Both the position numbers and the translations under genes were made by a program. The notes beneath the pieces are model-generated. The model did not search any database. It was not told the DNA's origin and was given only the letters and a program-made list of their open reading frames with translations. Source: Pelomyxa schiedti (lineage: Eukaryota > Protista > Evosea). Taken from it: 64,000 bases of DNA. Position 1 is the stretch's first letter. Each line of letters begins with the position of its first letter. Of the stretch, positions 28,520-41,894 are shown in pieces. The stretch covers positions 62,001 to 126,000 of the forward strand of contig JAHLWZ010000275.1 of NCBI GenBank assembly GCA_020536535.1, given 5' to 3'.

Positions 28520-28874
28520 CAACCTAGTACCTAGTTGGCCCAAAAAAACCATCAGGTCCAAATTAATAATCCTCCCTGGAAACAGTTGGAAAGCGAAAAG
28601 TGGGAAAAAAAAAAAAAAAACCAAAAACCAAAGCAACAGGCAAAGCAAAGTCGTCCCATGTCGCAGTACTGTGCATGCCCGTTGGAATGCAAAACACCGA
28701 TTCTAGTGCGACCAGGCCAAAACGCCAATGAGGAGGTGGGGGGGGAAAAAAAAAAAAAACCCGTAACCACAACGCAGCAACACCTTGGTTCCTTGTGGAA
28801 CTTGTTGGCGCCATCTTAGCTTTGCTTTTGTTTCGTTCCCACACTAACATGGCGGCCAGGTGGAGAGACACATC

Positions 28875-31800
28875 ATGGCAGAGCACGACGGACCCAGGCA
28901 CGACGAGCCCGGCACGGGGCCCCAGGCGCCAGTGTACCCGCCGCCGCCGAGCCGCTACGCCAGCCATCCCGGCACGACGAACTCCAACGCGTTAACAAGC
29001 GGAAGCGGAGGCGGCGGCGGAAGCCCCAACAACGCCGCCCCGCACACGCCCCCTCGCGAGAGAGGGCTTACGGGTTCCCCGGAACTGCGTTATGGGACGA
29101 GTACGGAAGCTGCTCACCGAGGAAGCCCTTTGTCCCCGACTCTGTCTGTGTCTCCGTCATCGCCCTCTTCTTCCTCTGGATATGGAAACAACGCAATATT
29201 TCCGGAATCTCCTATGTTGAAAGGAAGTGGCGCACTGGTGACTTCCAATATAGGGATGCTGAGTGGTGGTGGTAGTAGTACTGAAAGCACATTGCAGGAC
29301 CCGGGTCGATCCAGCAACACTGCCAGAAGTTTCTACCCAGGCCCTATGACACCGCTTACTGCAGCTTCTCCACCCAATCAAAGTACAAGTCCCAGTATTC
29401 CTGGACAATCTGCAATGCTACCACCGGCGATTCCTTGTGTCAGCAACGTATGCCAACCAGTTCAATCGGGCACAGTTCCCAATCCCAGCTCCCGTTCGAG
29501 TCTTAATACGAAATCTACCAGCAATTCACAAGCTGAAACCAAAGAAATGGAAAACCAGTCTCGTCTGCCAGCAAAACGTACAGATAAACCTGATACTCAG
29601 GTGGAACAACCATTGCCAAAGAGAAGCAATGCAGTATCATACGCTAATTTCCCGTACAAGGCAGCACCATCAGATCGAGCGATAATCATCTGCAAAACTT
29701 GCAATACCAGAGTGAAGGACAAGAAAGAATTTGACAATCACTCTTGCCCACATAAAGTAATTGCCTATATCTGTCCAAATTGTACACCCGAGGCCATATT
29801 TCCATCAACTCAGTGTTATGCTGCTCATGTCAAGAAGCACAAGCAACAAACCCCTTCTGTACCACCAACACTACAACCACAAGCAACAAACCTGGTCACC
29901 AATTTTGCATCCACAGCCTCATCCAATCTATTGCCAGCACTACCACCCGTTCAACAAGCCCCAATAACTTATGCCAAATTTTCAACACCTTCCAAGCCGT
30001 TGTCAACACAATTACCGCCTACACAGAACCATTCTACAGCACCAACAGTTCCTCCACATTCACCACTGTGGACGACAGCACAATTCCCGTGCTTTCATTG
30101 CAATGAGGTGTTCCAGGACCATCGCTCGATTGAGGCACACAAGAGAGAAAGGAATCATGTCTGCGACACAAAGTGGCAGTGCCGCCACTGTGGAATTCTC
30201 TTTGAAGCCCAACAGTCACATGCTGCACACATTGGACAAGTGAAGCAGGTATTCCCCATCCATAATCACAAATTAGGATTGTTCATTAATCGCAACCCAA
30301 AGGAAACTGGACTGAACGAAAAAGACACCGCGATGGTCATCAAACGTATTGAAGACACATTGCAGAAAATCAGTGTGAAGCTTCTCCCACCACTCGAGCT
30401 GATTGACATCAAGCCAGGGGCCCACCACCTTTCGAGGTCTTCAGAGAAAAGAACCATTGCTCTCGCGAACAGTGATATTAACCCTCTGGCAGTGCCTGAA
30501 CTGCAACCATACCAAGTGTTTCCATCACAGGTGAAAGAGGCTCATAAATTCTTTGAGATGATCCAAGGGGTGTGGAAGGACCTTCCAAACTCATGCCACT
30601 GTCTGGACGTGCTGATCCTTGTCCCACCACGAAACACACTGTTCAACCAGACACTCGAGAGAGCGAGGAGCTTTGAGGAACACATCACCAACAGCGAGCA
30701 GTTTCATGGGATGAGGAGGAACCTCCGCATCCGAGTTGTCAAGGGAAACAAGTACAAAGATAGCAAGAATGCCACAAAGGAGTTTTTCGACAAAGCTGAA
30801 AGGTGCAAAGACGATCCCGAATACTTCTTTGTCATCATCCACGACGAGTGCCACTGGGGTGCAAAGTGCGTCAACAAAGGGAAGAAACTTGGTCGGATTG
30901 GATCCATCCTCCGGGATGCCCTTGTGATGCCTGGAAACAACATGTTGACACTCCAGATTTCAGCAACTGCGTGGAACCAGATCGAGCTTCTGAGGCAATC
31001 TTTTGGGTCTGATGAGAAGATTGGAACACTCGAGAAGCACGTGCATGGGTGGACCGAGGTTGGTGGTCCGGGGATGGAATACATTGGTCGCCAGAAGCTG
31101 ATGGACCTTGGATGCATCATGCAAAGCGACTTGATTTGCCCTGGGAAGTGCCAGGAACTTTGCAACGAGCTGTTTCCTGATGACCCGTTCATGTACAACA
31201 AACTTGTTACCTCGAGTGACTGGCCCACCTTTGTGAGCATCATGACGTATGCTGCTGCGTTCATCAAGCGCCATTGTGAAGAGGTTTCTCTCCTCTTTTG
31301 TGAAAAGGTGGTCACTGACTGAATCTCCTCCCCAAAAAACAACACTATACAGTATTCTGAAGTCGTTCCCAGTGAAAGATGGATCCAAATTGTGGACTGT
31401 CCACACACCCTATATGCAGTGAGGCTGATACAACAGGGTCACGTTGTTGCTGTGAGGCTGCCGAGCAACCTGTCACGGTGTTACGGAAAAATCATCTCGC
31501 GGCTCCTGAAAGGGTTGGGAGAAACAAGATTCTTCTGTGTTCATGATGCCATTGACTCTGACCACGATGGCTCCAAAACACTCGTGACTGAGGAATGTGC
31601 GGTCCGTCTCGCGGAGTTGCAGGGAAGGAGAAAGGCCACATTCCGGAATTACCAAGACCTCAATGGGCTTCCTTGCCTGCTCGTTCTCGTTGAGAAGGTA
31701 TTCGTTGTGTGTGCTTTTTGAATGGTTTTGAACGTGACCATTGTGACTTCTTCCTTTCCTTCTTCTTTCTCTCCCTTTTTCACGTCCGTGATTCGTTTCC

Positions 31801-33154
31801 TCCAACAACATTCAGGCACGAATGGGAGACACAATGCCAAGCAACTTCAAACTGTTTGACCTGAGGGCACGTTACCTCACTCCAAAGTTTGTTTTTTCGG
31901 CCTTCTTGCAGGACATTGGACGTGCATTCAAGTGGTGCAAATCCGGCACAACGGCAAACGCCTGCATTCACGTTCTTCTCAATTCAGTGGCATTTCAATA
32001 CGCAAAAGATCCTGTTACCGCATTACAGAATTCAAATGGTCAGTTGGACCCTTGTTTGAGGAAGACTGGTAAAAAATCCTCGTCGGATCAGCCATCTCCT
32101 TTGCCAGACCCGTCTGATCAAGAAGTGGGTGATTTCTCAATTATTTCCTCCAGATTTACATCATTTTAGGAATCACCGGAGTCACTTGCAGTTTTCTTCC
32201 ACCCGAATCTCATTTGGGAGCCGTCGGAGAAGAGTTCTTGGAAATTTCTGGAGGAGAACTTGAGTGACCTGTCAGACAAACTGAAGCAACGGTTTGTGAT
32301 CTCAGCTGAGCCTCAGATCGGCAAGACTGGTGCTTACCTCCACTTCATTGAGCTCCTCGTGAATCACTTTCACCTCCCGCCTGCTAACCCGGAGGAGGAA
32401 AAGTTTTACGAAGTTCTCGAGAGCCTAAAAAACATGGATCCCAGTGAACTCCACTCCAAGTTGCAAGCCGAACCGGAAACACTCCAGAATTGGCAGCTTC
32501 TGCATCGGTATCAAGACCAGCAATTTAGTACCCTGTCTGCAAGGGAAAGAATGTCGGCACCAGAACACCAGAATGTTCCATCAACACGAGCAACCAACTT
32601 CATCAAATTCCTGTGCTTGAATGGTGGCCCTCTGAGCAAATTACCCGTGTGCCTTGTCGCGGACATGGGCTGTGGAACTTGTGCACTCGCAAAGAATTTG
32701 GCATGGCAACCTCAAATACAGGTGTGAGAGAAATGATTACTGCACCACCATTAACTTGGAAAATGAACAGGTTGCGAACTATGACCATTCTATCAAAACA
32801 GACTCAGACAGCAGGTTCACAGTTCAGCAGTGCAACTTCCTCCACACGCCATCCAACGCAGGGGTGTTTGATGTTGTTGTGTTCAGCATGTCACTGAGCT
32901 GGGGCGGCGCCAGGCCAGAGTTCGTTCAAAGCGCCATCGCGGAGGCAAAGAGGATACTCAAGCCGAATGGGTATGTCTTTGTGGCTGACGAGAAGAACAA
33001 CTGGTGCTGGCAACGTGGTGGCGTCTCACAGGCCGTTGTGGACGAATTCACCAAGTCCGGATTCACGCTGCTGGAGGATGGGCACAAACCAAGTCCAAAT
33101 GGAAGATACTTTTACCTTGCTGTGCAACTGAAGTCTGCCTCAGGCAAATGGTGA
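28875..33154 (+). CDS. Paralog 1: zinc fingers + circularly permuted SF2 helicase + Rrp8-like class I SAM methyltransferase
   Basis: Inferred introns: 30249-30302, 31284-31352, 31698-31815, 32125-32169, 32722-32770. Motifs in order: four ZnF-like units, VLILVPPRNTLFNQ, IIHDECH (30843), ISAT, LVLVEKARMGD, QDIGRA (31909), SAEPQIGKT (32308), VADMGCG, FDVVVFSMSL, EAKRILKPNG. Confidence 0.85.
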
Positions 33155-33336
33155 AAGGTTGTGCGCCAACGCACACAAGTCCCACAGTGTCCCGGTGCTC
33201 TGCATCCTAAGTAAGTAAATTTATAACCTTGTTGTCTTTACACCTTTATCAAACCCCACGAAGTCTTCCAAACCGTTGGAGGAAAAAGCAACAACAAAAA
33301 AAAAATCCAAAAGAGGCTCCGGGTTGCGTTTTTTCC

Positions 33337-36300
33337 ATGTCGACGTATGTCCCTTGCCCCATCTGTAACCAAGAGGTTATGGTTCCAGAAGACCATAGCC
33401 GCGACTTAGAAGTAAGCCTCTTTGGGTTTCGCCTTACCCCCCCGATACTACTCACTTCCCCCTCTCCTTTCGTGTCAACCAAACTACCCACAGATCGGCC
33501 GACACATCGACGCGGGGTGCCCTTGTGTCGGTTCACGTTCTCCATGGCCACAGGCACCAGTTCACCAGCCTCCGCCCAGTAGTCACATGAACGTATCATC
33601 AACTGCCGCAGCTCCCCCCACAGCCACAAGCACAAGCGCAAACACAAACGCCAGCAAGGTCGAAGGGGCTCCCGCGCTTCCGGGTACAACTGACTTTAGG
33701 GCTGGTATTCCGCCCGACGACCTCCAGCCATCACCCCCGCGGGGCCTAGATCCCTACGGGGACGATTTGCTGGATGACGAAGTAGAATTCGAAACTGAGA
33801 CCGAGTCCGGGTTCGGCGCTGAGGCGGATTCCAATATAAGTTCCGGCGACTTCGCACACAGCCCGATACATTATCTCCATAGAGATTATGGTGATGCCCC
33901 CGCAGAAACAACCACTGCTACTACTTCTTCTTCTGCTACTTCTACTTCTTCTGCTACTTCTACTTCTTCTACTACTACAGCAACAGGAGCTCCAAGACCA
34001 ATCCCCAATCCTCCAGCGCTTTCGATGCCTGGAAATGGTCAGCCTCAAAATGACGTGCCCACCAACGAAACTGAAATTGAAAGTGAAAGTTCTCTGCCAC
34101 TGAAACGTGTCAACATTTCTCGTGCGGAAAAGGAGGCAGGGGCACCACCGCCAAAGAGAGGTTATGCACCATCTACTAAGGTGAATGCGAAACCAACGCA
34201 GATGGCACCATCTGATAGCAATGATAACATAGGGTCTACGTCTCACACGATGCCAACCAAAACCCGCCGCCCGACCTATAGGAAAAAGCCATTATATACT
34301 CCAATTCCTGCAATTTTTGGTTGTGAGGTTTGCAAAAAACGGATGGATAAGAAGGAATTTCGCGTGCACCCATGTCCAAACAGAACACCCTTCTATATCT
34401 GTCCGACTTGCACACCGGAGTTAACGTTCTCCACGTCTCAAAAATATGCTTCTCATGCCAAGAACCAGCACCATCCCAGACAGGCTGCTTCCCCAGGTCC
34501 ACTCTCACCAATCAACCAGGTCAATGACTCTGTATGCACAACCGCACTGCCCAAGCCCTCGTCAGAATCACCAGCACCAACCAGTAATTCCACATCAGCC
34601 GATACATTGTCAATACTACCGCCACGGGGAGCACCAACCCATAGCTCCGCATTGCCAACCGAACCTCCCAATAGGCTACCGGCACATTTACCGTCACAGC
34701 GAGCTCCACTAGAGCTCACTGTAGATACAACCAAGTGGACAACCGCACAGTTCCCGTGCTCTTGTTGCAAGGAAGTGTTCCAGGAACACCGCTCGATTGA
34801 AGCACACAAGAGAGAAAAGAACCATATCTGCGACACAAAGTGGCAGTGCCGCCACTGTGGAGTCCTCTATGATGTCCAACATGCACATGCGGCGCACATT
34901 GGACAAGTGAAGCAGGTAAAAACCACTCCTTGTTGTTCTTTTCTTTATGAGTTTTTCCAAAATCCTCACGATAAAAAAAAGGAAATTTGGAAGCACGGAC
35001 TAAGTGAAGAAGACACTGAGACTGTAATCAATTGCATTGAGATGAAATTGAATGCCACCTTGCAAGCCATCAGTGGGCAGCTTCTTCCCCAACTCGAGTT
35101 TATCGACATCAAGCCAAAGGCTCACCACGCTTCAAAGGAATCAGAGGACAGAATCGATTCCCTTGCAAACCCACACATTATTTCACCAAATCTGCCGCCA
35201 TATCAAGTGTTTCCATCACAGAAGAGAGAGGCCGACAGTTTCTTCAGGATGATCCAAGGGGTGTGGAAGGACCTTCCAAATTCATGCCACTGTCTGGACG
35301 TGCTGATTCTGGTGCCACCACGAAACACACTGTTCAGCCAGACACTTGAGAGAGTGAGGAGCTTCGAGGAACACATCACCAACAAGTTTCATGGGAGGAG
35401 AAACCTCCGTATCCACGTTGTCAAGGGCAACAATTATCACAAAAGCAAAAAAGCAACAAAAGACTTTTTCGACAAAGCTGAAAGGTGCAAAGACGATCCC
35501 GAATACTTCTTTGTCATCATCCACGACGAGTGCCACTGGGGTGCAAAGTGCAGCAGAACGGGGAAGAAACTGAGCCGAATTGGATCCATCCTCAAGGATG
35601 CCCTTGTGAGGCCTGGAAACAACATGTTGACACTTCAGATTTCAGCAACTGCGTGGAACCAGATCGAACTTCTGAAACGATCTTTTGGGCCTGCCGAGAT
35701 AGGGATGCTGATGGCCCACGTCCGGGGGTGGACTGAGACTGGTCCTGATGACGGCATGGAATACATTGGTCGCCAGAAGCTGATAGCACGTGAGTGCATC
35801 ATGCGAAGCGACCTGATTTGCCCTGAGAAGTGCCAGGAACTATGTAACGAGCTGTTTCCTAACGATTCTTTCATGTGCAACAAACTTGTTACCTCGAGCG
35901 ATTGGCCCACCTTTGTGAGCATCATGACGTATGCTGCTGCGTTCATCAAGCTCCATTATGAACAGGTTGGTGCACTCCTCTCTTTTATTACGCGGACTCA
36001 GCTCTCACCCCATACAGCATCCTGAAGTCGTTCCCAGTGCAAGATGGATCCAAATTGTGGACTGTCCACACACCCTATATGCAGTGAGGCTGATACAACA
36101 GGGTCACGTTGTTGCTGTGAGGCTGCCGAGCAACCTGTCACGGTGTTACGGAAAAATCATCTCGCGGCTCCTGAAAGGGTTGGGAGAAACAAGATTCTTC
36201 TGTGTTCATGATGCCATTGACTCTGCCAACGAGCTTCGCTCCAAAACACTGGTTACTAAAGAATGTTCAGCTCACCTTGCAACTTTGCAAGGAAGAGACA

Positions 36301-37827
36301 AAGCGATATTCAACAATTACCAAGACCTTGATGGTCTTCCTTGTCTGCTCGTTCTTGTTGAGAAGGTATTTTGTGTTTTTTAAAAGGTTTTTATTTGTGT
36401 ACTTCCTTTCCCCAAACCAACAATTCCTTTTCCCCTTCCTCTTTTACTTAACCCTTCAATAATATAACAAATAGGCGCGAATGGGAGACACAATGCCAAG
36501 AAACTTCAAACTGTTTGACTTGAGGGCACGCTACACAACTCTGAGGTTTGTGTTTTCAGCATTCTTGCAGGACATTGGGCGTGCATTCAAGTGGTGCAAG
36601 GTTGGAACACCTGGTCAAGACTGTATCCACGTTCTTCTCAATTCCGAGACATATCACTATGCGGAAAACCCTGTTGAGGCACTCGAGAAATCGAATGGGC
36701 AGCTGGACCGCTGCTTAAGGAAGACTGGCAAAGCAGACACCTCTGATCAAGTACGCGCATTCTTTGACAGTGGTTTGCCTAATTTTTCTCAATTTTAGGT
36801 TCAGGATGCAGACTCACCAGAGTCGCTTGCAGTTTTCTTCCACCCAAATCTCATTTGGGAGCTATCAAAGGAGAGCCCATGGAGATTTATGAAGAGCGTC
36901 ACTGACCTGTCAGACAAACTGAAGCAACGGTTCGTGATCTCAGCTGAGCCTCAGATCGGCAAGACTGGTGCTTACCTCCACTTCATTGAGCTCCTCGTGA
37001 ATCACTTTCACCTTCCGGATTTCGACATGGAAGAGGAACTCTTTTACGATGTTCTCCAGCGCATAACCAACATGGATCCCAGTGAACTCCACTCCAAGTT
37101 GCAAGCCGGAGAACCGGAAACACTCAAGAACTGGAGGTTCCTACTTCACCACCAAGGCATGCAATCCTTGGCAAGTAACGATCCATTGGCACAGATTCCA
37201 GCGGCACGAGCTGACCGCTTCGTCAGATTCCTGTGCCTCGAGGGTGGCCCTCTGAGTTGTTTACCTGTGTGCCTTGTTGCGGACATGGGCTGTGGAACTT
37301 GTGCACTAGCAAAGAGGTTGGAACCCTGGCATCCTCACATTCAGGTTAGTGCCAATGACTTGTTGCCAAAAACCAAGAATTAAACAAATAATTACAGGGC
37401 TTCACAACAATCAACTAACTAACGATGCAATGAATAGGTTATGAACTACGACCACATCGCTGAAACGGAACCCGACATCCGGTTTACAGTGCAGCCGTGT
37501 AATTTCGTAGTCAGCACTCCATGCAACGCAGCGATGTTCGACATCGTTGTGTTCAGCATGTCACTGAGCTGGGGAGAAGCCAGGCCCGAACTTGTTCAAC
37601 ACGCAATCGCGGAGGCAAAGAGGATACTCAAGCCAAATGGATATGTCTTTGTGGCTGACGAGTTGAACAACTGGTGCTGGCAATCTGGTGGTGTCTCACA
37701 GGCCGTTGTGGAACAATTCACTGGGTCCGGATTCACGCTGCTGGAGGATGGGTTCCAAACGAGTGCCAACCGAAAGTACTTTTACCTTGCTGTGCAGCTG
37801 AAGTCTGCCTCAGGCACAAAATGGTGA
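33337..37827 (+). CDS. Paralog 2: UBZ-like finger + zinc fingers + circularly permuted SF2 helicase + SAM methyltransferase
   Basis: Inferred introns: 33412-33493, 34916-34981, 35966-36017, 36366-36474, 36751-36798, 37345-37437. Motif order matches paralog 1 (DECH at 35525, EPQIGKT at 36946). The reading frame is intact. Confidence 0.85.
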
Positions 37828-37936
37828 ACGTGATTCGGAATTTAAATTATTTTTTTCTTTATTGTATTTGTGGACCAATTTAGGCTACCGTACGACAACG
37901 TTCTTTAAGAAATAACAAAAAAAATAGTTTTGCGGG

Positions 37937-40900
37937 ATGTCGGACAACAACCCCCCGGTCGCTTTTACCGAAAACCCGAGGAATACGGTAGTCGCTACTT
38001 GCACAAAAAAAAAAACAACTTCGCAACTCACTCGTATTCCCCACGTATAGAACCCAAACCCCAGCGCCATCGAAACCTCTACGACCACGTCGCCAGCGAC
38101 GTCGACCTCGTCGGCTAGTCCTGCAAGTAGCCCTCCCAGCCAGAACCCAGTCGCCGATCACGTCCAGCAGCCGCGCAATCCCTGCGACAACGACGCTGCT
38201 ATCGCGGCGGCACTGCAGCAGCGGGAGGAAAACGGCGGCCGGGAGCTCCCCCGACTACCGGAAGAAAACCGTGAGCCTCTGTTGCGTGATACTGGTCCAG
38301 TCGCCAAGCACGAGGCGGTGAGTCCACCCAATGCCCCTGACACCATCAATTGTGGAGGCACTGCTAAGCTGGAAGCTGGGTATCACTTACCAGCAAAACG
38401 CAATTATGAATATGGGGATGAACCTCCATCTGCATCGCCTCCAAAGAGACCTACTGCCGTAGCCGCTAGTTTCCCGTACAAGCCAGCACTCCCAGATAGA
38501 GCGATTATCATTTGTAAGACCTGCCAAACCAGAGTGAAGGATAAGAAAGAATTCCTCAGTCACAAGTGCCCAAACAAAGTAATCGCCTATATCTGTCAAA
38601 GGTGCACATCCGAGGCCATATTCTCCACAACTCAGAGTTATGCTGCTCATATAAAGAACACACACCACTTAAGACAACACACCACTTCTGCACAACCACT
38701 AACAACAAACACGACATCTATAATCACACATCCCAATCCATTACCAATACCAACACCTGTGTCACCATATCCAACACAAAACACACCTTCCCATGCACCA
38801 CGAAATACACACACTCTAGCTGTAGATATGACAAAGTGGACGACAGCACAATTCCCGTGCTCTGTTTGCAATGAGGTGTTCCAGGACCATATCTCGATTG
38901 AAGCGCATAAGAGGGAACATAATCACATCTGCGACACAAAGTGGCAGTGCCGCCACTGTGGAGTACGATATGACGTCCAACATGCACATGCGGCACACAT
39001 TGGACAATTGAAAAAGGTAAAAACTGCTTCGTGGCACTCACTGATTAATCACTACCAAAGGAAATTGGTAAAAACAGATTAAATGACCAAGACACCGAAC
39101 GGGTCATCGGACTCATTGAAGAGAAATTGCAGAAAATCAGTGTGCAGCTTCTCCCTTCACTCGAGTTGATTGACATCAAACCCAATGTTCCCCACCCTCA
39201 AAAGTCCTCAGGGGGCACAACCAACTCCCTTGCGGACCCACACTCTAGTTCGCCAGATCCGCATCCAACAGCACCCGAACTCCCACCGTACCAAGTGTTT
39301 CCATCACAGGAGAGAGAGGCCCGCAAGCTTTTCGAGATTATTAAAGGGGAGTGGAACGAACTTCCTAACTCTTACAGAAGCCTGGACGTGCTGATCTTGG
39401 TCCAACTACAACTGTTCGATCAGACACTGAATAGAGTGAGGAGCTTTGAGGAACACATCACCAACAGCGAGCAGTTTCATGGGATGAGGAGGAACCTCCG
39501 CATCCGAGTTGTCAAGGGCAACAATTACAAAGATAGAAAACATGACACAAGGGAGTTTTTTGACAAAGCTGAAAGGTGCAAAGACGACCCTGAACACTTT
39601 TTTGTCATCATCCACGACGAGTGTCACTGGGGAACAAAGTACACCAAAAAAGAGAAACCTGGTAGGCTTGGCTCCATCCTCAAGGATGCCCTTGTGAGGC
39701 CTGGAAACAACATGTTGATACTTCAGATTTCAACAACTGCGTGGAACCAGATCGAACTGCTGAAACGATCTTTTGGGTCTGAGAAAATTGAGGAGAGAGA
39801 GAAGATTGGGAAGCTTGAGAAGCACGTGCATGTGTGGACTGAGACCGGTCCTGATGACGGCATGGAATACATTGGTCGCCAAAAGCTGATGGATAGTAAG
39901 TGCATCACCGAAAGCAACTCGTTTTGCCTTGAGAAGTGCGAGGAACTTTGTAACGAGCTGTTTCCTGATGACCCATTCCTGTTCAACAAACTTGCTGCCT
40001 CGAGTGACTGGCCCACCTTTTTGAGTCTCATGACGTATATTGCTGCGTTCATCAAGCGCCATTGTGAAGAGGTTGATTCCCTTTCCTTTTCTCCCGTTTG
40101 TGCCTCACCTTTAAACAAAACAGTATTCTGAAGTCGTTCCCAGTGAAAGATGGATCCAAATTGTGGACTGTCCACACACCCTTGAAGCAGTGAAGTTGAT
40201 AAAACAGGGTCACATTGTTGCTGTGAGGCTGCCGAGCAACCTGTCACGGTGTTACGGAAAAATCATCTCGCGGCTCCTGAAAGGGTTGGGAGAAACAAGA
40301 TTCTTCTGTGTTCATGATGCCATTGACTCTGACCACGATGGCTCCAAAACACTCGTGACTGAGGAATGTGCTGTCCGTCTCGCGGCGTTGCAGGGAAGGA
40401 GAAAGGCCACATTCCGGAATTACCAAGACCTCAATGGGCTTCCTTGTCTGCTCGTTCTCGTTGAGAAGGTGTGTGCTTTTTGAATGTGGAGGAGTCTTCC
40501 CCCCCCCCCCCCAACCGACTGACTGACAACCAGGCACGAATGGGAGACACAATGCCAATCAACTTCAAACTGTTTGACCTGAGGGCACGTTACCTCACTC
40601 CAAAGTTTGTTTTTTCGGCCTTCTTGCAGGACATTGGACGTGCATTCGAGTGGTGTCAGGCTGAAAAACCTGGAAAACCTACCCAAGACTGTATCCGCGT
40701 TTACGTCAACTCAATGGCATATCAGTATGCAAAAAACCCCGTTGAGACACTTCAGTGTTCCAATGGCCAGTTGGAACCTTGCTTGAAGAAGACCGGCGGC
40801 AAAAAATGTCCATATGAACGAGTGAGTTCTTTGACAATGTGGTTCCCCCCAGACTTACCTCAATTTTAGGTGCCGGACAACGCTTTCCCAGCGTCGCTGG

Positions 40901-41894
40901 AGGTGTTCCTCAACCCGAATCTCATTTGGAAGCCATCGGAAATGGGTTCCTGGAAATTTCTGGAGGAGAACTTGAGTGACCTGTCAGACAAACTGAAGCA
41001 ACGGTTTGTGATCTCAGCTGAGCCTCAGATCGGCAAGACTGGTGCTTACCTCCACTTCATTGAGCTCCTCGTGAATCACTTCGAACTCCCGCCTGCTAAC
41101 CATGAGGAGGAAATGTTTTACTATGTTCTCGGGAGCCTGACAAACATGGATCCCAATGAACTCCACTCCAAGTTGGAACGGGGCGACCCAGAAACACTCC
41201 AGAATTGGAGATTTCTGCTTCAGTGCCAAGACAAACTGTTTGAGGCAACGTCGGAAAGGGAGCGACTGTTGCTGATACCACCTGAAGATCAGACGGTTCC
41301 ATCATCACGAGCAGCCAGCTTCATCTGGGATCTGTGCTTTAAACACGGCCTTCCGCAAGAATCCCTTCTGGACGGCTCCCCCGTGTGTCTTGTTGCGGAC
41401 ATGGGCTGCGGAACTTGTGCACTCGCGAAAAAGTTGAAAGAATACCACCCCCAAATACAGGTGCGCGATCACATAATGTAAGTCCCACCCAACCACTATT
41501 CATCAACAAACAGGTGACCAACTTTGACCACACATACGGGGAAGAGGACAGCTGCTACAAAGTGGTGCCGTGCAACTTCACCAACACTCCAGCCCAAGAG
41601 GGAGTGTTTGATGTTGTTGTGTTCAGCATGTCGCTGAGCTGGGGCGGCGCCAGGCCAGAGTTCGTTCATAAAGCAATCGTGGAGGCAAAGAGGATACTCA
41701 AGCCGAAGGGATACATCTTTGTGGCTGACGAGTTGAACAACTGGTGTTGGCTGGGTGGCGTTGACCCGGTGCCGCGTGCGCTCATGGTAGAATTCGCAAA
41801 CCAGGCAATCTCGCGGATTGGGAATGATGGGAGCTTGTTCATCAAAGAGAGAAGCATCGATAGGAAGTACTTTTACCTGGCAATGCACACGTGA
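37937..41894 (+). CDS. Paralog 3: MIU/UIM-like motif + zinc fingers + circularly permuted SF2 helicase + SAM methyltransferase
   Basis: Inferred introns: 37988-38050, 39017-39060, 40072-40123, 40469-40533, 40822-40869, 41461-41513. DECH at 39616, EPQIGKT at 41020, VADMGCG. The reading frame is intact. Confidence 0.83.

What the first reader, a model, noticed from the sequence alone, without database searches (positions are those of the whole stretch)
28875..41894. Three tandem genes encoding ZnF + circularly permuted SF2 helicase + Rrp8-like methyltransferase: candidate nucleic-acid modification system
Seen: in all three copies the helicase motifs run Q-like (YQVFPSQ), Ia (VLILVPPRNTLFNQ), II (IIHDECH), III (ISAT), IV (VVAVRL), V (LVLVEKARMGD) and VI (QDIGRA). 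Only after these comes Walker A, FVISAEPQIGKTG. No P-loop lies upstream of motif Ia. The C-terminus carries VADMGCG...FDVVVFSMSL...EAKRILKP.G, and the N-terminal half has four C2H2/CCHC-like fingers. Established: a circularly permuted SF2 domain is described for the GREB1 family, where it is coupled to a TET/JBP-associated glycosyltransferase. The methyltransferase motif spacing resembles Rrp8/nucleomethylin (m1A). Inference: this is an ATP-driven DNA or RNA base-modifying enzyme in which a methyltransferase replaces the glycosyltransferase. I do not know of a characterised example.
Basis: partly seen in the sequence, partly recalled or inferred. Interest (0 to 1): 0.85.

Follow-up and report, generated by a model that had tools for sequence, protein, structure and literature searches.

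The report
Triplicated permuted-helicase–methyltransferase fusion genes
Three neighbouring genes of the anaerobic amoeba Pelomyxa schiedti each encode one large protein joining zinc fingers, a GREB1-type helicase motor with rearranged motif order and an Rrp8-like methyltransferase; this enzyme type is conserved across several eukaryote groups, appears unstudied, and probably uses ATP to open RNA or DNA and methylate a base.

Summary
Window 28658-41894 carries three intact, head-to-tail, intron-containing paralogues from Pelomyxa schiedti (copy 1 = Pelo_3530, 1345 aa). Each encodes a disordered N-terminus, four C2H2/CCHC fingers, a circularly permuted SF2 ATPase (Pfam PF20692, E 7e-53) and an Rrp8/nucleomethylin-type SAM methyltransferase. 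The ATPase's only P-loop (AEPQIGKT) follows motif VI. For the methyltransferase, Pfam PF05148 scores above its cut-off, and the top sequence and Foldseek match is RRP8 structure 2zfu (E 1.6e-11). Walker A and methyltransferase motif I share one exon, so this is a true fusion.

A library-wide profile search shows a conserved branch of the GREB1 helicase family. It occurs in Archamoebae, an ichthyosporean, a choanoflagellate, rotifers and environmental eukaryotes. In it the methyltransferase occupies the place of GREB1's TAGT glycosyltransferase: 23 versus 59 representatives, none with both. The branch also has its own motif VI signature.

Most likely function, by inference: an ATP-driven RNA (possibly DNA) base methyltransferase, with N1-adenine the best guess for chemistry. 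I could not check whether the P-loop sits in the ATP site, because model coordinates are not exposed. No characterised example was found. It is a new, uncharacterised variant of a known family.

The parts
28658..33154 (+). Copy 1 gene (Pelo_3530, 1345 aa). Exons: 28658-28735, 28860-30248, 30303-31283, 31353-31697, 31816-32124, 32170-32721, 32771-33154.
   Evidence: The spliced translation equals P0001 exactly. Annotated in GCA_020536535.1, contig JAHLWZ010000275.1.
33337..37827 (+). Copy 2 gene (1349 aa in my model, 1346 annotated). Exons: 33337-33411, 33494-34915, 34982-35965, 36018-36365, 36475-36772, 36812-37344, 37438-37827.
   Evidence: Homology-guided GT-AG splice search. No internal stop. 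The called gene has the same span.
37937..41894 (+). Copy 3 gene (1210 aa). Exons: 37937-37987, 38051-39016, 39061-40071, 40124-40468, 40534-40821, 40870-41460, 41514-41894. It lacks the N-terminal CxxC mini-exon and is diverged in motifs Ia, III and VI.
   Evidence: The model reproduces the annotated length of 1210 aa.
29691..30230 (+). Copy 1 zinc-finger cluster (aa 304-483): a CCHC + C2H2 pair, a P/S/T-rich linker, then a C2H2 + C2H2-like pair. Equivalents: copy 2 34322-34897, copy 3 38513-38998.
   Evidence: Regex and inspection. Pfam zf-C2H2 hits are weak and below the cut-off.
30510..32376 (+). Copy 1 circularly permuted SF2 ATPase (aa 559-1103, spliced across 3 introns). DECH lies at 30840-30854. 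Equivalents: copy 2 35201-37014, copy 3 39289-41088.
   Evidence: PF20692 E 7.2e-53. AlphaFold2 model of this domain: pLDDT 89.5, pTM 0.90. Foldseek matches SF2 ATPases (MDA5/LGP2, DDM1, Rad54, HsdR) with probability about 1.
32293..32331 (+). Copy 1 Walker A segment FVISAEPQIGKTG (aa 1076-1088), the only P-loop, located after motif VI. Equivalents: copy 2 36931-36969, copy 3 41005-41043.
   Evidence: Regex. It matches the C-terminal end (profile positions 658-702 of 716) of PF20692. GKT is at least 90% conserved across 100 family members. It is predicted as strand-loop-helix with pLDDT 94-97.
32620..33154 (+). Copy 1 Rrp8-like class I SAM methyltransferase (aa about 1185-1345; motif I VADMGCG at 32656). 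Equivalents: copy 2 37240-37827, copy 3 41356-41894.
   Evidence: PF05148 36.9 bits (cut-off 27) and PF08241. PDB 2zfu is the best match by sequence (9e-5; 7e-12 with the family profile) and by fold (E 1.6e-11, TMt 0.74-0.76).
32170..32721 (+). Copy 1 exon 6, which encodes Walker A, the helical linker and methyltransferase motif I in one open frame. Equivalents: copy 2 36812-37344, copy 3 40870-41460.
   Evidence: ORFs 32260-32727, 36889-37383 and 40870-41481 each contain both RFVISAEPQIGKTG and VADMGCG.

Best explanation
Each of the three genes encodes a single-chain enzyme that is probably an ATP-dependent nucleic-acid methyltransferase.

Shown:
- The three genes are intact paralogues under purifying selection.
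- The domain order is zinc fingers, then a GREB1-type circularly permuted SF2 ATPase with intact DECH, SAT, QxxGR and a C-terminal GKT P-loop, then a helical linker, then an Rrp8/nucleomethylin-type SAM methyltransferase with intact SAM-binding motifs.
- The fusion belongs to a conserved branch of the GREB1 helicase family in which this methyltransferase stands where GREB1 has its TAGT glycosyltransferase.

Inferred:
- The fingers target the protein to a nucleic acid.
- The SF2 motor, whose nearest structural neighbours are duplex-tracking translocases (RIG-I-like, Snf2, HsdR), uses ATP to remodel or locally open a structured RNA or a duplex.
- The tethered methyltransferase then methylates an exposed base.
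- Rrp8 family members make m1A in large-subunit rRNA, and N1 of adenine lies on the Watson-Crick face. The most likely chemistry is therefore N1-adenine methylation of a base that must first be unpaired, and RNA is the more likely substrate.
For: Architecture and integrity. dN/dS is 0.30-0.45 in the helicase and methyltransferase.

Family assignments:
- PF20692, E 7e-53.
- PF05148 above its cut-off in P0001, P0002 and P0003, and at 79 bits in P0014.
- RRP8 structure 2zfu is the top hit by phmmer (9e-5), by family profile (7e-12, next hit 1e-3) and by Foldseek (1.6e-11, next hit 8e-7).

Models: pLDDT 87 / pTM 0.85 for helicase plus methyltransferase, and 89.5 / 0.90 for the helicase alone. The Walker A strand-loop-helix scores pLDDT 94-97.

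Active-site conservation: D-E-x-H, SAT, QxxGR and GKT are invariant or at least 90% conserved over 100 homologues. The methyltransferase residues D660, G662, G664, D684, G724 and G746 (numbering of P0001:540-1345) are invariant in 13 methyltransferase-class members.

Effector swap: 23 methyltransferase-bearing against 59 TAGT-bearing representatives, none with both. The TAGT clade of 58 rows has SH-aLRT 97, and 16 of 17 methyltransferase rows lie outside it. The methyltransferase class has its own motif VI, QDxGRAFG[YW/K].

Both alternative effector families act on nucleic-acid bases in their characterised relatives. Rrp8 makes m1A645 of yeast 25S rRNA (PMC6085284). TAGT relatives glycosylate modified pyrimidines in DNA (PMC7968844, PMC6163654).

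Fused transcripts exist in Mastigella eilhardi (P0157) and Microstomoeca roanoka (P0020).
Against: - There is no biochemical or expression data for any member.
- The position of the P-loop in the ATP site was not verified in 3D.
- Motif VI lacks the second arginine that the TAGT class keeps (K in copies 1-2, E in copy 3, G elsewhere). This could lower or alter ATPase activity.
- Animal GREB1, the only characterised family member, was reported to glycosylate a protein (ERα) and its helicase module is described as catalytically inactive (PMC7968844). A nucleic-acid substrate is therefore not guaranteed.
- C2H2 fingers and the lineage-specific expansion fit DNA targeting at least as well as RNA.
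- Copy 3 has altered motifs Ia, III and VI.
Confidence: 0.6

Rival explanations
1. The substrate is genomic or invading DNA. On this view these are DNA-modifying (epigenetic or genome-defence) enzymes. The C2H2 fingers read DNA sequence, the SF2 motor tracks duplex DNA as Snf2 or HsdR do, and the methyltransferase marks DNA bases. This parallels the DNA-base glycosylation done by TAGT relatives of GREB1.
For: - The sister effector domain, TAGT, is related to DNA-base glycosyltransferases (PMC7968844, PMC6163654).
- Structural neighbours include the dsDNA translocases DDM1, Rad54, INO80, ISWI and HsdR.
- There are at least five paralogues in P. schiedti, including a tandem triplet, with fast-evolving finger and N-terminal regions (aa identity 20-60%, dN/dS 0.3-0.6). 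This is typical of conflict-driven families.
Against: - The methyltransferase is specifically Rrp8-like, and every characterised Rrp8 family member held in the literature read here acts on rRNA (PMC6085284).
- No DNA-methyltransferase family scored.
- The equally close structural neighbours MDA5, LGP2, RIG-I and Dicer are dsRNA motors.
- The fingers are not conserved outside Archamoebae.
Confidence: 0.25
2. The protein is a protein methyltransferase or a regulatory scaffold. As reported for animal GREB1, the helicase module would only bind (nucleic acid or partners), and the C-terminal transferase would modify a protein, possibly within a ubiquitin-linked pathway.
For: - GREB1 O-GlcNAcylates ERα, and its helicase module is described as inactive (PMC7968844).
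- Two methyltransferase-class homologues carry deubiquitinase domains: UCH in P0020, and a weak OTU hit in P0006.
- The second arginine of motif VI is lost in the whole methyltransferase class.
Against: - The Walker A GKT, DExH, SAT and QxxGR motifs are almost universally kept, which is not expected for a dead ATPase.
- Rrp8-type enzymes are not known as protein methyltransferases.
- Purifying selection acts on both catalytic domains.
Confidence: 0.1
3. Annotation artefact or decaying duplicates. On this view the helicase and methyltransferase are separate genes or transcripts that were wrongly merged, or some of the copies are pseudogenes.
For:
- Copy 3 has altered motifs Ia, III and VI and a shorter N-terminus.
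- My model of copy 2 differs by 3 aa from the annotation.
Against: - Walker A and methyltransferase motif I share one exon and one open frame in all three copies.
- All copies splice to uninterrupted ORFs with conserved intron positions.
- dN/dS is 0.3-0.45.
- The same fusion occurs as single ORFs in transcriptomes and in intron-poor contigs of unrelated eukaryotes.
Confidence: 0.04

Closest known systems
GREB1 / GREB1L family (Zn-binding N-terminus + circularly permuted SF2 helicase PF20692 + TAGT glycosyltransferase PF20691)
   Same: The helicase family is the same (PF20692, E 7e-53), with the same permuted motif order ending in AEPQIGKTG. The overall layout is also the same: Zn-binding N-terminus, helicase, then a C-terminal transferase (PMC7968844).
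   Different: The C-terminal domain is an Rrp8-like methyltransferase, not TAGT, and no TAGT hit was found. The helicase lies on a separate branch of the tree. Motif VI is QDIGRAF[K/E]W rather than QExGRxCRY. The C2H2/CCHC fingers were not shown to be homologous to the GREB1 N-terminal domain.
Rrp8 / nucleomethylin (NML, RRP8; Pfam Methyltransf_8 PF05148), the m1A methyltransferase of large-subunit rRNA
   Same: The methyltransferase core is closest to this family by Pfam, by PDB sequence search and by fold (2zfu). The motif I (VADxGCG), acidic post-I, FDVxVFxLSL and EAxRxLKPxG blocks are shared.
   Different: Rrp8 is a stand-alone nucleolar protein of about 400-450 aa without a helicase. Here the domain is the C-terminus of a 1200-1350-aa ATPase fusion. 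Identity to human RRP8 is only about 23%. Substrate and modified atom are untested.
Duplex-tracking SF2 motors (RIG-I-like receptors MDA5/LGP2/RIG-I and Dicer helicase; Snf2 ATPases DDM1/Rad54/ISWI; type I restriction HsdR)
   Same: These are the best structural matches of the helicase model (Foldseek probability about 1, E 1e-6 to 1e-4). They share the two RecA-like domains with a helical insertion between them.
   Different: TM-scores are low (0.3-0.4) and identity is about 11%. These proteins have the canonical motif order with Walker A at the N-terminus. No significant sequence match to any solved helicase was found.
Helicase-coupled base modifiers: restriction-modification enzymes that combine an SF2 motor with a methyltransferase, and kinetoplastid JBP2 (Snf2 ATPase + thymidine hydroxylase). 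Analogy drawn from general knowledge, not tested here.
   Same: The logic is the same: an SF2 ATPase physically coupled to a nucleic-acid base-modifying domain.
   Different: The helicase lineages and modifying domains are unrelated. There is no nuclease here. The comparison concerns how it may work, not membership.

Membership tests
cpSF2-GREB1 (Pfam PF20692) | Significant match to the curated profile, above the gathering score | tested here: met
   P0001 scores 180.7 bits against a cut-off of 26.2, E 7.2e-53, in three stretches covering profile positions 2-702 of 716. Exon pieces of copies 2 and 3 also hit.
cpSF2-GREB1 (Pfam PF20692) | Permuted motif order: Ia, II (DExH), III (SAT), IV, V, VI, then Walker A. 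No P-loop upstream. | tested here: met
   Motif positions in all three proteins, with a single [AG]x4GK[ST] per protein after motif VI. The family consensus is the same.
cpSF2-GREB1 (Pfam PF20692) | The C-terminal strand / P-loop / helix completes RecA-like domain 1 and faces DExH and motif VI in 3D | not testable with these tools
   The AlphaFold2 models are confident (pTM 0.85 and 0.90). The segment is predicted as strand-loop-helix with pLDDT 94-97 after a low-confidence return loop. Coordinates and contacts are not exposed, so distances could not be measured.
GREB1 proper (orthologue of animal GREB1/GREB1L) | C-terminal TAGT glycosyltransferase domain (PF20691) | tested here: not met
   No TAGT hit in P0001-P0003. 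A local TAGT HMM hits 59 family members and none of the 23 methyltransferase-bearing ones. The window proteins lie outside the TAGT clade.
Rrp8 / nucleomethylin (Pfam Methyltransf_8, PF05148) | Profile match above the gathering score, and a better match than to generic methyltransferase families | tested here: inconclusive
   Above the cut-off: P0001 at 32.8-36.9 bits, P0002 at 60.4, P0003 at 51.7, P0014 at 78.7 (cut-off 27). It is the best methyltransferase family for P0002, P0003 and most homologues. For P0001 itself the generic Methyltransf_11 scores marginally better (38.5 against 36.9 bits).
Rrp8 / nucleomethylin (Pfam Methyltransf_8, PF05148) | Closest solved structure is RRP8 | tested here: met
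   2zfu is the top hit by phmmer (9e-5, next 0.078), by family profile (7.1e-12, next 1.3e-3) and by Foldseek (1.6e-11, TMt 0.74-0.76, next 8e-7).
Rrp8 / nucleomethylin (Pfam Methyltransf_8, PF05148) | Stand-alone nucleolar enzyme that forms m1A in helix 25.1 of large-subunit rRNA | not testable with these tools
   Activity cannot be tested in silico. The architecture differs because this is a fusion. I could not determine whether P. schiedti also has a canonical Rrp8: the word-indexed search with the methyltransferase profile returned only ArsR-UbiE-type proteins.
Class I SAM-dependent methyltransferase | Motif I GxGxG-type loop, acidic residue after strand 2, and motif IV/post-IV blocks all conserved | tested here: met
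   VADMGCG, N[YF]DH, FD[VI]VVFSMSLSWG and EAKRILKPxG occur in all three copies. D660, G662, G664, D684, G724 and G746 are invariant in 13 homologues.

The most novel reading that the evidence does not exclude
The cpSF2-Rrp8-like methyltransferase proteins are a previously unrecognised, Amorphea-wide class of ATP-driven nucleic-acid methylation 'writers', sister to GREB1. The motor would unpair a base so that the methyltransferase can methylate its Watson-Crick face (for example m1A), on RNA or DNA targets chosen by lineage-specific N-terminal modules (zinc fingers, WD40). If so, the GREB1 family began as helicase-coupled base modifiers with exchangeable effector domains. The Pelomyxa expansion would then reflect a regulatory or genome-defence use.
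Probability: 0.3. Interest if true: 0.8.

Novelty: new variant of a known kind. Interest (0 to 1): 0.6.

Why it matters
GREB1 is a much-studied hormone-response and cancer gene, yet the biochemistry of its helicase module is essentially unknown, and no structure of the permuted helicase is in the PDB copy searched. A sister branch was found here in which the same motor keeps all ATPase motifs and is wired to an RNA-type base methyltransferase. This supports the view that the family's ancestral job is helicase-coupled nucleic-acid modification. The amoebal and holozoan proteins are single-chain and lack GREB1's large vertebrate-specific regions, so they could be more tractable for testing that job. 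If the enzyme writes m1A or another Watson-Crick-face methylation in an ATP-dependent way, it would be a new type of epitranscriptomic or epigenetic writer. If it proves inactive or protein-directed, it would constrain ideas about GREB1 evolution instead.

Tried and rejected
1. Viral origin or relatives. A scan of IMG/VR with the family alignment matched 329 patterns, and none was confirmed by tblastn. Foldseek against BFVD gave only generic SF2 helicases at TM 0.3-0.4. No evidence for a viral source.
2. Prokaryotic relatives. I did not repeat it.
3. Nearest stand-alone methyltransferases, or a canonical Pelomyxa Rrp8. The word-indexed search with a 12-sequence methyltransferase profile returned only four ArsR-UbiE-type proteins. 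This was uninformative.
4. Independent recognition of the C-terminal P-loop segment as helicase motif I. Pfam scans of ten 71-aa segments at E up to 10 matched only the end of PF20692. The family profile against PDB gave only marginal P-loop hits: Miro 3e-3, DnaB 0.6, Cas3 0.6.
5. Literature. Iyer et al. 2013 (PMC3763556), the source of the cpSF2 description, is not held. Full-text searches for cpSF2 with methyltransferase found nothing relevant.
6. Mobile-element context. The neighbours are ordinary cellular genes: phosphatase, PqiA-like, Arf, serpin and LIM. The other paralogues sit among kinase, TFIIA and IBR genes. Rejected.
7. Rfam and tRNA scans of the window found nothing.
8. Pseudogene hypothesis. 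Rejected for all three copies, since the ORFs are intact and dN/dS is below 0.5.

Full report
**What is in the window**

The region is eukaryotic DNA from the anaerobic amoeba Pelomyxa schiedti. Searching the long first ORF returned 'hypothetical protein Pelo_3530 [Pelomyxa schiedti]' (P0001, 1345 aa, contig JAHLWZ010000275.1 of GCA_020536535.1).

The repeat finder shows a threefold direct repeat with a period of 4.1-4.7 kb across 28.6-41.9 kb. tblastn of P0001 gives three collinear hit sets.

I rebuilt the gene models by exact mapping and by a homology-guided GT-AG search.
- Copy 1 (28658-33154; 7 exons, 6 introns of 45-124 nt) translates exactly to P0001.
- Copy 2 (33337-37827) gives 1349 aa, against 1346 annotated.
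- Copy 3 (37937-41894) gives 1210 aa, equal to the annotated length.
- Copies 2 and 3 have introns at the same positions as copy 1.

None of the copies has an internal stop. Nei-Gojobori dN/dS is 0.30-0.40 in the helicase and 0.28-0.45 in the methyltransferase. The N-terminal low-complexity and finger regions evolve faster, at 20-60% aa identity.

The flanks are ordinary cellular genes: serpin upstream and a LIM protein downstream. This is a tandem triplication of one gene, not an operon-like system or a mobile element.

The motifs appear in the stated order in every copy: YQVFPSQ, Ia, IIHDECH, IS[A/T]T, [V/I]VAVRL, LVLVEK|ARMGD (split by intron D), QDIGRA, then FVISAEPQIGKTG. A regex for [AG]x4GK[ST] finds exactly one P-loop per protein, downstream of motif VI.

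VADMGCG, N[YF]DH, FD[VI]VVFSMSLSWG and EAKRILKPxG are present in all copies.

Each copy has four fingers in two pairs, CCHC + C2H2 and C2H2 + C2H2-like, separated by a P/S/T-rich linker. Copies 1 and 2 add a CxxC mini-exon at the very N-terminus.

Corrections:
- The gene starts at 28658, not 28875.
- Copy 3 has Ia VLILVQLQLFDQ, III ISTT and VI QDIGRAFEW.

**Domain identities**

- Helicase. On the spliced protein, Pfam gives cpSF2-GREB1 (PF20692) at E 7.2e-53, covering the profile from position 2 to 702 of 716. The Walker A segment matches the very end of the profile.
- Methyltransferase, sequence. The C-terminus hits Methyltransf_8 (PF05148, the Rrp8 family) above its cut-off. The scores are 32.8-36.9 bits for P0001, 60.4 for P0002, 51.7 for P0003, and up to 78.7 for homologue P0014. 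For P0001 alone the generic Methyltransf_11 is marginally higher.
- Methyltransferase, solved structures. The best PDB sequence match is 2zfu, the methyltransferase domain of human nucleomethylin/RRP8. It scores 9e-5 with the single sequence (next hit 0.078) and 7.1e-12 with the family profile (next hit 1.3e-3).
- No solved structure matches the helicase part by sequence.

**Structure**

AlphaFold2 with a 100-sequence alignment gave a confident model of helicase plus methyltransferase (residues 540-1345; pLDDT 87.0, pTM 0.85). With 92 sequences, the helicase alone gave pLDDT 89.5 and pTM 0.90.

Foldseek of the full model against PDB puts 2zfu first (E 1.6e-11, TM normalised to target 0.74-0.76, 23% identity). 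This is five orders of magnitude ahead of Trm9, NodS and METTL6.

The helicase model matches SF2 motors with probability about 1 but low TM (0.3-0.4). The hits are MDA5/LGP2/RIG-I and Dicer helicases, the Snf2 ATPases DDM1, Rad54, INO80, ISWI and CHD1, and HsdR. Low TM is expected for a permuted, two-lobed domain.

The Walker A element is predicted as strand (1075-1080), loop, then helix (1086-1101), with pLDDT 94-97. It follows a roughly 30-residue low-confidence loop. This is what one expects if the chain returns from RecA2 to complete RecA1. I could not measure contacts because coordinates are not exposed.

**The wider family**

A profile search of 1.84 billion representatives found 706 proteins at E ≤ 1e-3. 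Among the 158 sequences held, a local HMM of the window's methyltransferase domain hits 23. A TAGT HMM built from Pfam-confirmed GREB1-type members hits 59. None carries both.

Named methyltransferase-bearing members:

| Protein | Source | Notes |
|---|---|---|
| P0157 | Mastigella eilhardi (Archamoebae) | transcript |
| P0059 | Sphaeroforma arctica (ichthyosporean) | |
| P0020 | Microstomoeca roanoka (choanoflagellate) | WD40 + cpSF2 + Methyltransf_8 + UCH |
| P0009 | Rotaria magnacalcarata (rotifer) | |
| P0017 | metagenomic eukaryotic contig | lies beside a hAT transposase |

Several other metagenomic eukaryotic contigs also carry the fusion.

A maximum-likelihood tree of the helicase domain (quick IQ-TREE search, LG+G4) separates a TAGT-associated clade of 58 rows (SH-aLRT 97) from the rest. 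The rest holds 16 of the 17 methyltransferase rows. The window protein groups with the other Pelomyxa paralogues, Mastigella and an environmental sequence (SH-aLRT 98).

The methyltransferase class also shares a motif VI signature, QDxGRAFG[YW] (K or E at the G position in Pelomyxa), without the second arginine. The TAGT class has QExGRxCRY.

Across 100 members, D-E-x-H, SAT, QxxGR and GKT are invariant or at least 90% conserved. In 13 methyltransferase-class members the SAM-binding residues are invariant.

**Is the fusion real?**

Exon 6 of each copy encodes Walker A, the helical linker and methyltransferase motif I in one open frame. The same fusion is found as single ORFs in transcriptomes of other species. 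Merged-gene artefacts are thus very unlikely, though no Pelomyxa transcript was available.

**Mechanism**

Shown:
- The ATPase and SAM-binding motifs are intact.
- Both domains are under purifying selection.
- The fusion is conserved.

Inferred: an ATP-driven motor coupled to a base methyltransferase.

Characterised relatives of both alternative effector domains act on nucleic-acid bases. Rrp8 forms m1A645 in yeast 25S rRNA (PMC6085284). TAGT relatives glycosylate modified pyrimidines in DNA (PMC7968844, PMC6163654). This makes a nucleic-acid substrate the most economical reading.

N1 of adenine is on the Watson-Crick face, so an Rrp8-type reaction needs an unpaired base. Coupling to a duplex-remodelling motor is therefore mechanistically sensible. 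I rate RNA somewhat above DNA.

Caveats:
- The only studied family member, animal GREB1, was reported to modify a protein, and its helicase is described as inactive (PMC7968844).
- The methyltransferase class lacks the second motif VI arginine.
- The fingers and the paralogue expansion (at least five genes) would suit DNA targeting.

**Novelty**

The helicase family and the methyltransferase family are both known. Automated annotation already labels some homologues as 'GREB1-like circularly permuted SF2 helicase domain-containing protein'.

I found no description or characterisation of the helicase-methyltransferase branch in the literature held. The founding paper, PMC3763556, could not be read. 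I therefore cannot exclude that the architecture is mentioned there.

Verdict: a new, uncharacterised variant of a known kind, and of real interest for understanding GREB1-family biochemistry.

Noticed in passing
window 31425-31571 (copy 1), with equivalents in copy 2 (about 36090-36236) and copy 3 (about 40196-40342): A 150-nt stretch of exon 4 (motif IV region, VVAVRLPSNLSRCYGKIISRLLKGLGETRFFCVHDAIDS) is 96-98% identical at the nucleotide level among all three copies, while neighbouring windows are 72-81% identical. Copies 1 and 3 stay 97% identical for a further 150 nt, into intron D. This looks like a gene-conversion tract (also D1).
   Followed up: partly
family-wide (alignment A2; proteins P0016-P0148): GREB1-type, TAGT-bearing representatives almost all keep DE[CA]H, [ST]AT, QxxGR..R and the GKT P-loop (39 of 39 have GKT). 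The GREB1 literature nevertheless describes the helicase module as catalytically inactive (PMC7968844, PMC6163654).
   Followed up: partly
P0020 (Microstomoeca roanoka, 1610 aa); P0006 (Logan contig, 1024 aa): Some methyltransferase-class homologues carry ubiquitin-system domains. P0020 is WD40 + cpSF2 + Methyltransf_8 + UCH deubiquitinase. P0006 has a weak N-terminal OTU hit (2.9e-4, below the cut-off). This may point to a ubiquitin-linked pathway.
   Followed up: no
window 37937-41894 (copy 3): Copy 3 is the outlier. It has no CxxC first mini-exon and a shorter N-terminus. Motif Ia is shortened by two residues, motif III is ISTT and motif VI is QDIGRAFEW. It is still an intact ORF with dN/dS below 0.5. 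It may be sub-functionalised or under relaxed constraint.
   Followed up: partly
L004 846-4540 (P0002, contig JAHLWZ010001121.1): Paralogue P0002 is named 'bifunctional metallophosphatase/5'-nucleotidase' in NCBI but has no such Pfam domain. It is ZnF + cpSF2 + Methyltransf_8. Its model also lacks the motif VI segment present in the near-identical P0003, which probably reflects a missed exon.
   Followed up: partly
window about 28600-28640, 33290-33320 and 37900-37925: Each copy has an A-rich tract (runs of about 8-16 A) within roughly 70 nt upstream of its ATG, and all three genes begin ATGTCG. This may be a shared core-promoter or 5'-UTR element.
   Followed up: no
P0012 (Planoprotostelium fungivorum PRP75493.1, 2887 aa): This amoebozoan protein has two complete cpSF2 modules (Walker A at residues 802 and 2218) followed by one TAGT domain. 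The duplicated arrangement could bear on how the circular permutation arose.
   Followed up: no
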